A DNA stretch of 63,929 nt, the filler included, from Choristocarpus tenellus KU-1152 (taxonomy: Eukaryota > Protista > Phaeophyceae), in NCBI GenBank assembly GCA_964200185.2. It is 12 parts of 12 records of this genome, joined end to end, with 100 filler letters (N's around TTAATTAATTAA, not from the genome) between each part and the next. Parts side by side here need not be neighbours in the genome. Positions count along the whole stretch, not along the records: positions 1 to 10,064 come from CAXNAD020003174.1; 11 more parts are not named here. One strand, written 5' to 3'. The notes beneath the pieces are model-generated. The model worked only from the letters and a program-made list of their open reading frames with translations. It was not told the DNA's origin and ran no database searches. Shown here in pieces: positions 1,027-10,064 of this stretch. The position numbers and the translations under genes are program-made. Within the stretch, counting starts at the first letter, position 1, and each line of letters starts with the position of its first letter.

Positions 1027-1267
1027 AGGCAGGGTCGCATTTTTAAGGATCCCAAGAAAGTCTAAAAATATTATTTTGTACAACTGTAAAAAGGGGCTTT
1101 GCTTAATTGTGGTGCCACTTTGTGTGTGTAAAGGGAGGATATCAATTTTGTGCACACTGTTGTGTACGTAAGGCAATAAAATTGAGTGCATTGCACAGGG
1201 TAAGAAATATCGCTCAGAATGCGAAAAAGGGTCAAAACCTGCCTACCCCTCAATTGTTTCTGTTCTC
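1027..1267 (+). mobile_element. MITE family C, diverged copy lacking the left TIR
   Basis: Co-linear similarity to 1889-2148 (shared AAGGATCCCAAGAAAG, ATTGCACAGGGT, TGCCTA..CTCAATT). Confidence 0.7.
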
Positions 1268-2148: not shown

Positions 2149-3345
2149 AATGGAGCTCATTGTACCCCACTACGGCACCTTGGTCCCTCTGATTTTGTTG
2201 ATTAGAGGGTGGATCCTGTATCTCCCATGACACTTTTCCCACAGGTTGAAAGATGTGATATGAAAGGAGGTCTTTATCCCCATGCGCCCACCTAGATCCT
2301 TGACTGACATCCTCACGTAATCCATTCCGAGTGGTTGGAGTAAGGTTGGAAAATATGTAGTTTTCCTTGGGACAATTGCCTCCAAGTCCCACTTTTTTGA
2401 CACAGCGAGACCTCATTACACTGAGAGCAATGATGAGTGGTAATAGAGGGGCAAACATTTCCAGACTACCACTAACATCTTGGTTGACTGAAGTGTAAAA
2501 GGGCCGAATATCTTGGAGGGATACTTTCGGGGCCAGTGTATTGTACCAGGTACAACCAAAGACAAGTCTCTAAGTTATATGTTTATTGTGGGTAACATTC
2601 TGGAAAAGGCGTAGAGAATACTCCACTCGCCGTCGTGCGACTTAGGGCGCGACAACGACCTTCATTAAATGTCCAAAATAAATCCACAATCGCAGTGTCG
2701 CGAAATCACATACAAAAAAACAAACGACTCTGTACATCCCACAAAAAAATACGGATCCTGAACCCTACACCCCTGCGCGTTCAAAAAAAGTTCCGGTCGG
2801 CTTCGGAAGTGGAAGAAATATAAGAAGTCCGGACATTGTCAGAAAAGAAAAGTTTATGTGTGAAACACGTTAAATGAAACCTTCACTTTTCAGTTGAAGG
2901 GGAAGGGATAAGACCTGCCGTGGAAGAGGGGTTTGGATATAGAGAGATTGGTCTAGAAAGAGAAATCGCACCAGGGTAAAGTCAGTCAATCGGACCTCGG
3001 GAGAAGTTAAATGGTGGGAAAGGTACAACAACAATAATAGTAGTTTTCTATTAGCACCTTCCATTTGTTCATCAGTGTCACGAGGAAGTGGAGTTGCGTC
3101 GCCATGTATAATAATTCATGATAGAAGAAAAAACCCTGAGGGAAGTTGAAAGGACAGCGATCCCAAAAGGTATACCTTGGAGGGGAGGTGCGTATTACTG
3201 ATGACGTAAGGAAATATTTCGTATTGAAATAATACTGTTGTCCACGTTACTACTACTACTACTGTATAAACTATTCACCATTTCTGAGAGTTGTGCCATC
3301 TACATACAGTGGTCGAGGGTGTATACACAACACAACAATATTGTG

Positions 3346-3603
3346 ATGGGACTCGACCTGTGTTACAGCAACACAAGCATAGCCGAAAACACGAGTCCCT
3401 TGAGTACACCTGTTAAGAAAAGCCTGACTCGGGGTGGTGAGGTGATGTCGAACCATCGAGAGGATGGACACAGTTCTAGACCTACCTGGCATCATCAACA
3501 GCACCCGAACTATGTCCCCCATTCCATCTCTCACGATCAAGTAATGGCGACAAAGAGTGAACCAGGGTGGGGAGCTGAGAAGCGACCTTGGAACGAAGAA
3601 CAG
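3346..3603 (+). CDS. NRF1/EWG-like transcription factor, exon 1 (start codon uncertain: ATG 3346 or 3445)
   Basis: Open frame ending ...GAEKRPWNEEQ with donor CAG|GTGAAG, phase 0; KRP matches the NRF1 KRKRPH basic motif. Confidence 0.6.
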
Positions 3604-3741
3604 GTGAAGTAATGGGCTTCAAGGTCTCGTAACACTTAACCAGGATGGAGTCTGTTCCCCCATCTTTGTATTGCTATAGTTGCTATATTGGCCTTTCCTA
3701 CTTGTCATGCTGATGTTTTCCTTTGCACCACACGGAGACAG

Positions 3742-3900
3742 GCTGGATTTCCACTGGATCCGCGACACCTCCTTAGCAAGCTCAAAGTTTTGCACAAGGA
3801 GGCCAAGAAGAAGTATGGGGTGGATCTCGTCACTGTCTACTTGGGGGAAGGAGGTCGGATCAACACCATCGTTAGTCGCAAAGACGCGGTTGTCACAAAG
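3742..3900 (+). CDS. NRF1/EWG-like transcription factor, exon 2 (dimerisation / MADS-like core)
   Basis: Acceptor ACAG|GCT, donor AAG|GTCAGG, 53 codons; RHLLSKLKVLHKEAKKKYGVDLVTVYL aligns without gaps to NRF1 TRLLRKLRATLDEYTTRVGQQAIVLCI. Confidence 0.75.
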
Positions 3901-4294
3901 GTCAGGGGAAGGATCGGCTCAACTATTTTGAAATTTTTCGACCCCTCATCACTGTTCTGGAACCAATTAGTCTACAAATATACCAGCTATGGACACATCT
4001 TATAAATCTCGGGGCAACGTTATGAAACTTATCTCTCAAGACATATGTGTGGGTAGCCTCAACAAAACTACCGATCTGGACAACGGTGTACACTCATCAC
4101 CATTGAAGGAAAAGTATCAAGTAGCTGTTACTGTGTTGAGATTGAAATTCTGCTTAAATTCGGTTGTGTCGTAGGTGCTGAGGTTAACCTGCCCTCGGAT
4201 TGTAACCATCAGGACATTGCCCCTCTTCCTCCCACGGTGTGTCGTCCACATTCTACGAAGTGATTCCAATCTCGTTCCCTATAAAAACCCTCAG

Positions 4295-4559
4295 GTAATG
4301 ATGGATGAGACGGTCCGAAGCCGCCAACAAGCCATTGTTGACTCTTTCAGACTTCAAAGCAACAACAATAATAATAACGAGACCATGTCGGGAATTGAGG
4401 TCGGTGGCGATGGTGTTGCGGTTGGCGAGGTAGAGCATCACCCCCACGGACACACAAATAAGTTTTTGAGGGTGACGGATCGTTCCACTTCACCCATTGA
4501 GACAGGGATGAGCGGATACCGTGAGCAGGCGACGCGAACCCCGAAACGGCAAAGGACAG
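4295..4559 (+). CDS. NRF1/EWG-like transcription factor, exon 3
   Basis: Acceptor CCTCAG|GTA, donor ACAG|GTATGT (phase 1); MMDETVRSRQQAIVDSF aligns to NRF1 PLENVVRKYKSMILEDL. An alternative in-frame acceptor at 4174 would add 40 aa. Confidence 0.7.
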
Positions 4560-5077
4560 GTATGTGTTTTGAAGAGCCACCACCCCTCTTGGTCAGGCAT
4601 TCAAGTTCGCTTCATCTATTATCCCCATACATGTATGTTCATAAAAAAATGTGCCCACATTAAACACCTGTGCAAGCTTGGTCCAATATTTGTAACCCTG
4701 CTCAAAGAACGAGGGCAATGTATAAGAATGCAGTTGTGTGTCATGAGTGAAGTATTGGGTTGTGTTCGTCGTTGAGAGTTGGTGGTGGTTTAGGAAGGCG
4801 GGTTGTGGATGGTGGGGGGTGGGGGCAACTCTGCCCACTGTTCGTGTGTGGTGACAACATGCAGCACAGTACTTTTCAGTGGAAAAAATATGTATATTTA
4901 CATACGTATGTTTTTATGTTAATCTCGGTATGGTCCTGTACAACAGCATCAATATCACAGTAGCATCTCCTACAGACATGTATCTCTTAAAAAAATCTTA
5001 GGGTTAGGGATACGAAATGTAAGTAGTAAATATATCTCCAGCATGTTTGTACAAGTATATACTGCGCATGGTACCTG

Positions 5078-5513
5078 CATTGTTATGCTTGTACTAGTAT
5101 GTACTATTGTATTATTATGCTCGTACTAGTATGTACTGTTGTATTGTTATGTTTGTACTAGTATATACTATTGTATTGTTATGTTTGTACTAGTATGTAC
5201 TATTGTATTGTGATGCTTGTACTAGTATGTACTGTTGTATTGTTATGTTTGTACTAGTATGTACTATTGTATTATTATGCTTGTACTAGTATGTACTGTT
5301 GTATTATTATGCTTGTACTATTATGTACTATTGTTATGTTTGTACTAGTATGTACTATTGTATTGTTATGTTTGTACTAGTATGTACTATTGTATTGTTA
5401 TGCTTGTACTAGTATGTACTATTGTATTGCTATGTTTGTACTAGTATGTACTATTGTATTGTTATGTTTGTACTAGTATGTACTATTGTATTATTATGTT
5501 TGTACTAGTATGC
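5078..5513. repeat. Intronic minisatellite, ~32-bp unit (TGTACTAGTATGTACTATTGTATTGTTATGTT), ~13 copies
   Basis: Directly visible tandem array; each unit contains the palindrome TACTAGTA. Confidence 0.95.
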
Positions 5514-5636
5514 ACTGCCAAGAGTGTATTACTAGGGTAGTACCAATATGAATCGCCTTCAGGACCTATATTTTTTGTTCCAGTACCAATTTGTGCTGAC
5601 AGTACCTGGATTATTAGGGTGGTACCAGTATGTGCG

Positions 5637-5810
5637 CTGACTGAACCAGTATTGTTACACAATACCAATGTATACTACTGACTGAACCAGTATTGTTACA
5701 CAAGTACCAATGTATACTACTGACTGAACCAGTATTGTTACACAAGTACCAATGTATACTACTGACTGAACCAGTATTGTTACACAAGTACCAATGTATA
5801 CTACCGACTG
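5637..5810. repeat. Intronic minisatellite, 42-bp unit, ~4 copies
   Basis: CTGACTGAACCAGTATTGTTACACAAGTACCAATGTATACTA repeated. Confidence 0.95.
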
Positions 5811-6015
5811 TACCTGTACTGGTCCAATTCAATTATCTTGGTGCCTGCACGCCTTACATGACTACACACTGCTGAACCTGTAATATTATACTTAAAACTT
5901 TCTAAAATTAAAACCTTTCATTTTTGTCATTTTCAGAACAAACCAAGCCTCCCCCCCTCCCACCTCCCCTCCCCTCCCTATTTCCCTCCCATCAATCCAT
6001 GATCATCTCCATCAG

Positions 6016-6587
6016 TGACAGAAGCCAAGGCAACTGAATTCAAAGACGCCATGTCATCCAACAGGCAAGGAAGAGGAGGCTCTGGCAACAGAGATGCAAC
6101 CCCCCCAACCGTGTCCAACGCCTCCTCTTCTACAAACGCCTCCCTGGGCGGTGGAGGCGTCAGCACCTCGAACCTCCTGAACGAGTACCTTCCATCGAAC
6201 CCCGCTGCCCCCCCCCCTGCCCCTGCCCCCGCCCCCGCCCCCGCCGCCGCCTCAAGATCCGGATCTTCTTCCTCCTTAACAACGACCAATGGGAACATCG
6301 ACTCCACGACTCCCCTGTTTAGCAACAACAACAATAACAACAACAACAACAATAACGCCTCCTCTTCTTCAACCTCTTCTTCTTCTTCTTCTTCTTCTTC
6401 TTCTTTTTCTTCTTTTTCTACGGCACCGGCTCTTCCAGTTACGGTGCCCTTGCCCTCGACCAATAAGGGGCTGGCTGAGTTCATTCGGCAGGTGCTGGGG
6501 TTGCGTCCGCTATATGGGAATGAAGCTGCGAGGCCGTGTTTCTGGCCGGATGATGTCCCTTGGCAGAAGGGGAAGAGCATCAGTCAG
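6016..6587 (+). CDS. NRF1/EWG-like transcription factor, exon 4 (low-complexity linker plus DNA-binding-domain core)
   Basis: Acceptor CATCAG|TG completes the phase-1 codon G|TG; donor CAG|GTGAGG, phase 0; PA/poly-N/poly-S linker, then LAEFIRQVLGLRPLYGNEAARPCFWPDDVPWQ vs NRF1 LRAFIPEMLKYSTGRGKPGWGKESCKPIWWPEDIPWA. Confidence 0.85.
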
Positions 6588-6777
6588 GTGAGGGTTGTTT
6601 TTTTTTTAAATGTTTTTTTTAATGTTTTTTAATTTTTATTTGGTGCAACAAAAGCGAACAAAAAAATAGTGTAGTTGAAAGGTACAGTGTATACCCTTTT
6701 TGTGTATAAGTTGAGAAAAAAAAGAAGGCGTTGGATGTGCTCTTCTGTATGATCGATCGATTGCTTTTTTGTTTGTT

Positions 6778-6808
<31 letters not shown>

Positions 6809-7094
6809 ACTGTGTGCGTGTATGTATGTGTCTTATGTATGTGTCTTATGTATGGACGTTTTTTTACATCCTTAATGTGAGTGTGTAAATTGTGGCGTGA
6901 TAAATATGTGTATCTACGTATCTGTGATTATTATTTTTTTATTGTGTGGGTTTGAAGTAGTAAATGAGCACAAAACGGTACCAGAGTTGGCTTTTTTTTT
7001 AGTTGGTTGGGGTTAGGGTTAGGGACAGGCATTTGTGAATATTCACTGTGGTGGAGAGGTTGAGGGGATGGTAGTTAGAGTGGCCTTGGCATGT

Positions 7095-7149
<55 letters not shown>
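7095..7149. repeat. (CA)n(GA)n microsatellite
   Basis: Directly visible. Confidence 0.95.
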
Positions 7150-7672
7150 GCTGCGTTTAGTGTTTAGTGCTGAATATGTTGGAGTCAACCATGTCAATGC
7201 TCAGCTAGTCCTTCTCAACTCTGTCCAACTTTCTGCTATGGGGTGACACCGTGTAGGATGTGATTGCCTTGTGGTTTGGTCATGCCAAGTGCATAACTTC
7301 CTCACAAAAATGATTCGTACTGTACAATGCATAGTACCAAATATAGATAGACTGTTGCTGGGCTCATGGTTTTGAGGTCAAATTAGAGATATCCATCAAT
7401 CAGGTATTGGTGCATCGGTATGATGTTATTAGGTATGATGGTATAAGGTATGATGTTATAAGGTATGCCTCTCCTATGTGTTGTACATTGCACCCCACCT
7501 ATAGCACAGAAGGGGCAGGGCTAGGTATCAGTTTGAGTCGATCCCTAACAAACGTACGTGTGCTGCCAAGTGTGTATGTTCAAATCATGTTCAAATCATG
7601 TTCAAATCATGTTGTCACTGGTTTCTTTGACGGTAGTTAGTTGGTCATAATGTTCTGCTGATGGTGAAAATT

Positions 7673-7935
7673 TTGCAGTTTTGATAGTGTTTGGTACTTA
7701 GTAGTTTTGATGGTGTTTGATACTTAGTACTCTTGATAGTGTTTGGTACTTAGTACTCTTGATAGTGTTTGGTACTTTGCAGTTTTGATAGTATTTGATA
7801 CTTAGTACTCTTGAAAGTGTTTGGTACTTTGCAGTTTTGATAGTATTTGATACTTTGTAGTTTTGATAGTGTTTGATACTTAGTACTCTTGATAGTGTTT
7901 GGTACTTTGCAGTTTTGATAGTATTTGATACTTTG
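7673..7935. repeat. Intronic minisatellite, ~26-bp unit with two alternating variants
   Basis: AGTACTCTTGATAGTGTTTGGTACTT / TGCAGTTTTGATAGTATTTGATACTT; explains the periodic ORFs 7698-8159 and 7750-8049. Confidence 0.9.
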
Positions 7936-8687
7936 TACAGTTGGTAGTATGTGGTACTTTGTACAACAATAGGGAAGTAGAAGGGTGCTGATACAGAAGA
8001 TTTGCAGAATATTATTCTCAGAACAATTCGAGCAGATGTACAAGGCCAAAGATGAGGTACAACCAGTATGTTCAAAATGGTATAGAGCTGGTTAGAGTCG
8101 GTGGAGTGCAGAGGCGATGTGGTTTGTGGGAGGTGTGCGCGGTCGGCACTAGGTAACACACTTTAATGAATTTGAGGTAGTAACCCTGGAGGCACGAGAT
8201 TGTGAGCAGACGCACGATACGGAGGAGAGCAGCTGACAGATACGGACTATTAATAGAGCCGGTGTGAGTTGGTTTGAGCCGACTCGATCTCGTGTGTGGT
8301 GTTTTAAATATGTTTTGTCTTGAGGAACGATGACGTTTTAAATATTTTTTTGCAGTATTACTTTTTGTTTTGATTTGAAGGGTTAGGGTTAGGGTTAGGG
8401 TTAGGGCTAGGGTTAGTGAACTACAGCTGGCAGTGGTAGTGTACAACACGGATGGATGGATGGATGAAAGGAATAATGGATGGGAATTATTCAGATATGT
8501 GAGGTAGTTGTAGGTCTGCTGTGTGGAATAAGATGCAGTTGATTTTCTAAAATATATGTTTTCCTTTCTAAAGTCAATGAAATCAAATACTGCATATACT
8601 TGTAAGTTAAATACTTGAGTTGAAATGACTCATTCATAGAGTGGGGAATTATATTGGTGTCAAACTGGACTACTTTTGCTCTCATCA

Positions 8688-8888
8688 ATATTATTATTGC
8701 AATTATTATTATTATTGCTATTATTATTATTATTGCTATTATTATTATTGTTGCTATTATTATTATTGTTGCAATTATTATTATTATTGCTATTATTATT
8801 ATTATTGCTATTGTTATTATTATTGCTATTATTATTATTATTGCTATTATTATTATTAGTAGTAGTAGTCGTATTATTGTTGTTGTGA
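8688..8888. repeat. Compound (ATT)n/GCT microsatellite
   Basis: Directly visible; source of the poly-I/Y/L/N ORFs. Confidence 0.95.
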
Positions 8889-8947
8889 TGGTTTGCCCAA
8901 TTTGCTTCAAGGTTAGAGAGACAAGCATACAACCTCCCACTGCCTTA

Positions 8948-9055
8948 TATGTACATAATATACATAATACATATGCACATAATATACATAATACATATGC
9001 ACATAATATACATAATACATATGTACATAATATACATAATACTTATGTACATATA
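8948..9055. repeat. 24-bp minisatellite (ATATGCACATAATATACATAATAC), ~4.5 copies
   Basis: Directly visible. Confidence 0.9.
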
Positions 9056-9885
9056 GTCTGATACGATCAGTATTATTCAATCCAAGTATATGGTACTTTT
9101 TGGTACTTTTTTTTTTAATGCATGCTATACAGACAGACAGAACCCTCCATTATTAGTAATCATTAGCAGTTATCAGTAATCATTAGCACAGCTACCTCTT
9201 CGCTGCAGTTGGTCTACACTACAAGTGTTAGTGTTAGGGTTAGGGTTAGGGTTGTCACAGTACTGTCTTAGTGATTCCCTTGTGAAGTGTGCCCTATTCT
9301 AGCTCCATGCATGAAGACAGCTTTGTAGTGTTTCTCCTGTTTATTATTTATTTTTTTAGTATTAATTTTTAAATTTACTATTCATTGTTGTACTATTTGT
9401 TACTATTTTTTTAAAAATTATTTAATACTTATTATTTATTAATTATGATTTGTTATTTACTATTTATTTATTGTTTATTATTTTACTAGTTATATTTTGC
9501 TTATGATAAAAAAAGGACATTTTAGGGTGTATCTGCTAGTGGAGTAAGCTGCACTCATTAGATTCTGCATGTACATTCAGATTAAAAAAAAAAAATTCAA
9601 ATATATGTTTCATTTGTAGTTGATGGGAAAAGGTTTTCGTGTGTAAATTTATCTTGAAAAAATTCAGGTATTTTTTATTTCATTTCAGAACAAAAATATA
9701 ATTTGTTGTCCGTGTTGTAGCATCACAAGCAAGCCAGTGCAGTGAATATTGCTCTGTGATGATGCTCCCTGCGGGCTTATCACTGATTGTTTTTTAGATA
9801 ACCTTTGTAGATAACCTTTGTTTTTGACCTCCGAAGCGATGATGTTTGGTGTTTTTAAATTTTTTTTGTGCTGGCTCTTTTTCAG

Positions 9886-10008
9886 ATGAACAACACCTAC
9901 TTGCAGAGTCTCGCCAGGGCTGCGCTCAAGCACCAGGCACAGGCAGCCTCAGAGCTTGCGGCTGGGGGAGGGGGGGGAGGGGGGGCCGGGGGGGGGGGGG
10001 GAAAAAGG
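9886..10008 (+). CDS. NRF1/EWG-like transcription factor, exon 5 (3' end uncertain)
   Basis: Polypyrimidine acceptor CTCTTTTTCAG|ATG, phase 0; MNNTYLQSLARAALKHQ aligns to the last NRF1 DBD helix SWTQALRTIVKNCYKQH; then poly-G and an in-frame TAG at 10009, or a donor, near the contig end. Confidence 0.7.
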
Positions 10009-10064
10009 TAGAGAAAGGGGAGAGAGGCGCCGGGGGGTGGGTGGAAGGGGGAAAAAAAAAAAGA

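What the first reader, a model, noticed from the sequence alone, without database searches (positions are those of the whole stretch)
3346..10008. Five-exon NRF1/EWG-like transcription factor gene in a probably non-animal genome
Seen: exons 3346-3603, 3742-3900, 4295-4559, 6016-6587 and 9886-~10008 join through canonical GT-AG introns with matching phases (0,0,1,0) into one ORF of about 460 aa that the ORF track fragments. Five blocks match human NRF1 (recalled sequence) in the correct order: KRP; LLxKLxxxxxExxxxxG; MDETVRSRQQAIVDSF; LxxFI...G.E..+P..WP.D.PW; and a final helix LQSLARAALKH. Known: NRF1/EWG/P3A2 (Pfam Nrf1_DNA-bind) is characterised mainly in animals and highly conserved there. 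Inference: this is a very divergent member, likely stramenopile, with a low-complexity linker of over 200 aa between the dimerisation and DNA-binding parts, which would imply a much older origin of the family.
Basis: partly seen in the sequence, partly recalled or inferred. Interest (0 to 1): 0.9.

Follow-up and report, generated by a model that had tools for sequence, protein, structure and literature searches.

The report
Brown-algal NRF1-like transcription factor
A brown seaweed has an expressed, single-copy gene, also found in other brown algae, for a probable DNA-binding regulator built like the animal factor NRF1 but with its DNA-binding part doubled; this suggests the design is not animal-specific, although it probably reads a different DNA sequence.

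Summary
The gene is real. Spliced contigs of one run (X3) show introns 1-3 and reach into exon 5. The contig is from the brown alga Choristocarpus tenellus (public model CAM9422220.1). The five-exon, ~460-aa model is incomplete: the 'stop' near 10008 lies in a degraded poly-G contig end, and the gene continues on contig C15431 with a second DNA-binding domain (DBD). Orthologues in other brown algae share the intron positions and the layout: N-terminal alpha-beta-beta-alpha domain, linker, two tandem DBDs. The DBDs' best Pfam and PDB match is NRF1 (E 1e-3 to 2e-4). Ectocarpales orthologues pass the PF10491 cut-off but lack the N-terminal domain. That domain has no sequence hit. Predicted models rank SRF/MEF2 MADS folds first, which is the fold of NRF1's dimerisation domain, but not significantly. 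NRF1's base-reading residues R206 and N242 are not conserved, and R244 only partly, so the GCGC motif is not expected. Verdict: an NRF1-architecture transcription-factor variant in brown algae. Shared ancestry over both domains is likely (~0.6) but not proven; ancient inheritance versus transfer is unresolved.

The parts
3290..3603 (+). Exon 1: 5' UTR from about 3290; first ATG at 3346; probably disordered N-terminus ending with the KRPW motif (public model starts at Met 3544)
   Evidence: Spliced contig starts at 3290 (a contig start is not a proven transcription start); no ATG in 3290-3345; no homologue of this exon found in orthologous loci
3742..3900 (+). Exon 2: long helix plus beta-hairpin of the N-terminal, MADS-like (putative dimerisation) domain
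   Evidence: 47-53% identical to exons with the same borders in L010 and L029; differences concentrated at third codon positions; AF2 helix-strand-strand
4295..4559 (+). Exon 3: last helix of the N-terminal domain (4295-~4354), then linker ending in a basic, NLS-like motif (PKRQR)
   Evidence: First ~20 residues conserved in L010, L029, L023; RNA junctions; NLS role is inference
6016..6438 (+). Low-complexity linker (Ser/Asn/Pro-Ala runs, 141 aa); the 5' part of exon 4, possibly removed by an alternative acceptor
   Evidence: Junction 4559->6016 in spliced contig; acceptor 6438/6439 is 423 nt downstream, in frame, and used by CAM9422220.1
6439..6587 (+). First NRF1-type DBD, N-terminal part: helix TNKGLAEFI plus the YG..WP.D.PW loop
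   Evidence: PF10491 E=0.0035; PDB 8K3D E=6e-4; 63-74% identical to exons in several other algal contigs
9886..9960 (+). Exon 5, reliable part: C-terminal helix of DBD1; the exon continues through a poly-Gly tract into G000:C15431:1-149 (first helix of DBD2)
   Evidence: Loose end in spliced contig; same exon and borders in L010, L023, L028, L029; continuation
9961..10064 (+). Degraded poly-G contig end overlapping the start of contig C15431; the apparent stop at 10006-10008 is not real
   Evidence: 78% identity over 104 nt to L021:17-120

Best explanation
A single-copy brown-algal transcription-factor gene sharing ancestry with animal NRF1/EWG over both modules: an N-terminal MADS-fold domain, a long flexible linker and NRF1-type three-helix DBDs, here duplicated in tandem before the brown algae diversified. 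Shown: gene structure, splicing, conservation, two DBDs, and DBD similarity to NRF1. Inferred: the N-terminal domain homodimerises as in NRF1/SRF; the protein is nuclear; the dimer presents four DBDs that read repeated half-sites at flexible spacing. Because R206 and N242 are replaced, the site is probably not TGCGC. In Ectocarpales the N-terminal domain was lost, so tandem DBDs in one chain may replace dimerisation.
For: Splicing. Single copy: one DD and two DBD matches in the genome. Same intron positions in L010 and L029. L029 shares RNase_T and TAF9 neighbours with the Ectocarpus fasciculatus gene. The DBD profile hits only NRF1 below E=0.5 in PDB (E=1.8e-4); 18 of 24 pieces hit PF10491; Ectocarpales orthologues score 26.7-27.1 bits against a 23.5 cut-off. 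ESM Atlas structure search: N-terminal part nearest SRF (TM 0.57), AGL27, fungal MADS; DBD's first row is Ewg (TM 0.48). Own AF2 model alpha-beta-beta-alpha; 22 of Foldseek's top 50 are MADS chains. NRF1's DD has SRF MADS as its closest structure and lies N-terminal to the DBD (PMC10810270). DBD1 and DBD2 form separate groups, each with Choristocarpus and Ectocarpales (support 86/57 and 90/86).
Confidence: 0.6

Rival explanations
1. Convergent architecture: a degenerate true MADS-box (SRF/MEF2 type) fused, independently of NRF1, to DBDs of the wider NRF1/YDR124W (and possibly EIN3) superfamily. It would still be a dimeric transcription factor, but not an NRF1 orthologue.
For: All MADS-type structural hits are SRF, MEF2, SEP3 or MCM1, not NRF1; SRF rows show 19-23% identity. 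Stand-alone DBD relatives occur in fungi (PF11001; Atlas clusters with Basidiomycota and Mucoromycota members) and as triple repeats without a DD (P0012/14/15), so the DBD is a mobile module.
Against: Same domain order as NRF1. The genome has no MADS hit (best E 1.2), and surveyed brown algae are reported to lack MADS genes (PMC10484287). From memory only: the algal helix pattern LL.KL+....E.....G matches NRF1 helix 3 without gaps and lacks the basic KRR.G stretch of MADS.
Confidence: 0.2
2. Origin by horizontal transfer: an NRF1-like gene passed from an opisthokont to the ancestor of brown algae, so the family need not be older than opisthokonts. Compatible with the best explanation as to function; differs only in history.
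For: Searching 1.84 billion representatives with the DBD exon found only brown-algal-type sequences and the triple-repeat proteins, none recognisably from diatoms, oomycetes or other stramenopiles.
Against: That search used a 56-aa query and did not find animal NRF1 either, so absence means little. The gene is very diverged and intron-rich, and related DBDs are widespread in eukaryotes. No viral carrier found.
Confidence: 0.2
3. The N-terminal domain is not MADS-related; alpha-beta-beta-alpha is a common arrangement. The protein is then a tandem-DBD factor with an unrelated accessory domain.
For: No significant structural or sequence hit; the best VIA-wide rows are SMC heads and phage proteins; Atlas search with my model gave unrelated folds; the domain is dispensable in Ectocarpales.
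Against: Two separate models (ESM Atlas, AF2) both rank MADS first in two searches, and the position matches NRF1's DD.
Confidence: 0.15

Closest known systems
NRF1 / EWG / P3A2 (Pfam PF10491; PDB 8K4L, 8K3D)
   Same: Domain order: MADS-like module, flexible linker, three-helix DBD with the G..+P.WG/YG.E..+P.WWP.D.PW loop. T201, L205, F208, I209, G223, P231, W234, P235, W240 and S245 equivalents are kept in DBD1.
   Different: Two DBDs per chain; linker ~70 or ~210 aa against ~28; R206, N242, R244 are A, K, K in DBD1 and C, K, R in DBD2; shorter loop before the last helix; below the Pfam cut-off; no detectable sequence similarity over the DD.
SRF/MEF2 MADS-box factors (PF00319)
   Same: Predicted helix-strand-strand-helix topology; they are the top structural neighbours.
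   Different: No Pfam hit; scores not significant; separate DBDs are attached; the basic DNA-contacting N-terminal half of the MADS helix appears absent (inference).
Fungal YDR124W-like helical bundle (PF11001)
   Same: Weak hits on the same WP-containing loop (best E 0.005).
   Different: Scores consistently lower than PF10491.
Ectocarpales PF10491-annotated proteins (e.g. CAM9728641.1)
   Same: Syntenic orthologues with both DBDs and the same DBD introns.
   Different: No N-terminal domain; faster-evolving; already carry an automatic PF10491 label.
Plant EIN3/EIL (PF04873)
   Same: From memory only: also has a P.WWP-type DBD.
   Different: PF04873 does not ring on this locus or on any family member.

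Membership tests
NRF1/EWG/P3A2 | PF10491 above gathering score (23.5 bits) | tested here: not met
   P0001 19.0 bits; exon 15-17.5. The complete two-DBD protein was not scored; Ectocarpales orthologues pass (26.7, 27.1 bits).
NRF1/EWG/P3A2 | DBD whose best match is NRF1 | tested here: met
   match limited to ~28-44 residues
NRF1/EWG/P3A2 | N-terminal MADS-like dimerisation domain homologous to NRF1 DD | tested here: inconclusive
   Topology right and MADS ranked first, but not significant and NRF1 itself not retrieved; no sequence hit
NRF1/EWG/P3A2 | Base-reading residues R206, N242, R244 | tested here: not met
   Residues from PMC10810270 mapped with PDB alignments onto alignment A5: A/K/K in DBD1, C/K/R in DBD2
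NRF1/EWG/P3A2 | One DBD per chain | tested here: not met
   Two tandem DBDs
NRF1/EWG/P3A2 | Homodimer binding GCGCATGCGC | not testable with these tools
   Needs SEC-MALS and DAP-seq/SELEX
MADS-box (SRF/MEF2) | PF00319 match | tested here: not met
EIN3/EIL | PF04873 match | tested here: not met
   the genome's one weak hit (E=0.043) is on another contig and is not a family member

The most novel reading that the evidence does not exclude
The MADS-fold-plus-NRF1-DBD architecture was present in the common ancestor of stramenopiles and opisthokonts, and this gene is its vertical descendant. NRF1 would then be an ancient eukaryotic family related to MADS proteins, and brown algae, reported to lack MADS genes, would keep a cryptic MADS-fold regulator that standard scans miss.
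Probability: 0.4. Interest if true: 0.75.

Novelty: new variant of a known kind. Interest (0 to 1): 0.55.

Why it matters
The NRF1 structure paper names only animal homologues and sees no evolutionary link to SRF (PMC10810270). The main text of the 60-genome brown-algal survey has no mention of NRF (its TAP table was not read). A conserved, single-copy, expressed factor of this design adds an overlooked transcription-factor family to brown algae, whose regulators are poorly known. It also offers a bridge sequence for testing an NRF1-MADS relationship, and a natural experiment (loss of the dimerisation module after DBD duplication) that can be tested in Ectocarpus.

Tried and rejected
Animal or fungal contamination: rejected (public model assigned to C. 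tenellus on a 10064-bp contig; orthologues with the same introns, one syntenic with an Ectocarpus gene). Stop at ~10008: rejected as a contig-end artefact. Two paralogue families: considered, then rejected because L029 and L022 share neighbours; they are orthologues and Ectocarpales lost the N-terminal domain. The single-sequence AF2 model of P0001 (pLDDT 37) and its Foldseek/VIA searches were uninformative. Word-index search with P0001 found only itself. The 18S genome search failed.

Full report
Observation. No run is on record as RNA, but run X3 behaves as one. A single contig covers 3290-6200 and skips exactly 138, 394 and 1456 nt at GT..AG sites, and a second contig leaves the genome at 6591 with 22 letters matching the start of exon 5. 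Runs X1 and X2 show unspliced sequence. All three runs come from one study. The only spliced sequence of this gene that I used is the public protein P0001, returned.

Organism. P0001 is CAM9422220.1 from Choristocarpus tenellus, on a contig of 10,064 bp, the length of this piece. A beta-tubulin of the same assembly is 99% identical to a cluster of Ectocarpus, Scytosiphon, Laminaria and Sphacelaria proteins. The gene is brown-algal, not animal.

The model is cut short. An orthologous locus, L010, has the same exons and then continues into a second DBD. Searching the genome with that exon finds contig C15431 (E=3e-10). That contig starts with a G-run, then an open frame ending RKTKKELCDVIRSKLG at a phase-1 donor (149/150), and holds the second-DBD exon at 1786-1912. 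The last ~100 bases of the window are a 78%-identical, error-rich copy of the start of C15431, so the stop at 10006-10008 is an artefact. The join of the two contigs is inferred from this overlap and from orthologue structure; no read spanning it was seen. The true C-terminus is unknown, as C15431 also ends in a G-run. A second in-frame acceptor at 6438/6439 is used by the public model and removes 141 low-complexity residues. The long form is shown by the spliced contig. The short form is only hinted at, by a contig that begins at 6436, exactly where the two forms would converge.

Family. Relatives come from many algal contigs and from Ectocarpus, Cladosiphon, Nemacystus, Scytosiphon and Hapterophycus. 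L010 and L029 carry the N-terminal domain and both DBDs with the same intron positions; their species are not given. In exon 2, differences fall mostly on third codon positions (11/8/25 between L010 and L029; 11/9/18 between the window and L029), as purifying selection predicts. L029 lies next to RNase_T and TAF9 genes, as does the E. fasciculatus gene, so these are orthologues. Yet an HMM of the N-terminal domain finds nothing in the Ectocarpus locus or in Ectocarpales proteins, so the domain was lost or changed beyond recognition there. DBD1 and DBD2 form separate groups, each holding Choristocarpus and Ectocarpales, with moderate support. Choristocarpus belongs to an early-branching order (my knowledge), so the duplication predates the brown-algal radiation. 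The gene is single-copy in this assembly.

DBD. The exon-4 tail hits PF10491 (E=0.0035) and PDB NRF1 8K3D (E=6e-4) as best matches. A profile of algal sequences only finds NRF1 at E=1.8e-4 and nothing else below 0.5. Of 24 pieces, 18 ring PF10491 and 10 ring the fungal PF11001; none rings EIN3. P0001 stays under the cut-off (19 bits), while Ectocarpales orthologues pass it. So the presence of this domain in brown algae is already implicit in automatic annotation, though I found no paper noting it. NRF1 reads bases with R206, N242 and R244 (PMC10810270). Mapped through the PDB alignments, these are A, K, K in DBD1 and C, K, R in DBD2; no algal sequence keeps R206. The GCGCATGCGC motif should therefore not be assumed.

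Mechanism. Shown: an expressed, conserved gene with one N-terminal folded domain and two NRF1-type DBDs. Inferred by analogy with NRF1: homodimerisation through the N-terminal domain, nuclear import through the basic motif ending exon 3, and binding to repeated half-sites with the spacing freedom that long linkers allow. Loss of the N-terminal domain in Ectocarpales suggests that tandem DBDs can supply the avidity alone. Confidence that both domains share ancestry with NRF1 is about 0.6. Independent fusion with a MADS box (0.2) and an unrelated domain (0.15) remain open. Whether the gene was inherited vertically or transferred is a separate, open question.

Verdict. It probably works like NRF1 but should not be filed as an NRF1 family member: it fails the Pfam cut-off, the base-reading residues and the single-DBD layout, and the DD test is inconclusive. 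It is a new variant of a known kind; interest 0.55.

Noticed in passing
window 1027-1253 and 1912-2138: Two diverged copies of a ~230-bp non-coding element upstream of the gene (alignment A7); probably an old dispersed repeat.
   Followed up: partly
window 8379-8416 and 9224-9253; L021:790-837, 2696-2743: Interstitial TTAGGG (telomere-like) tracts inside introns, with many minisatellites (32-, 42-, 26/78-, 24-bp units).
   Followed up: no
L003:1-836 (G000:C10314): The SSU rRNA alignment shows a 262-nt stretch where the Rfam model has about one position; possibly an rRNA intron or insertion. The genome also has two distinct 5.8S sequences (L002, L003), so a second eukaryote or divergent rDNA may be present.
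   Followed up: no
P0012, P0014, P0015 (ENA/JGI assemblies; L020): Proteins with three tandem NRF1-type DBDs and no dimerisation domain, one followed by a BTB domain; source organisms not given. A separate case of DBD multiplication.
   Followed up: partly
L010:1441-1515; L029:9563-9634; L022:12353-12415: A motif PPGLG...LWA..A.SLKRK is conserved between Ectocarpales and other brown algae just before the phase-1 intron, but is not recognisable in Choristocarpus exon 3; possible cofactor-binding or NLS motif.
   Followed up: partly
L022:2385-14966; L029:308-11401: Conserved microsynteny RNase_T gene, TAF9 (divergent), this factor in two brown algae; no such neighbours within the 3.3 kb upstream in the window.
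   Followed up: partly
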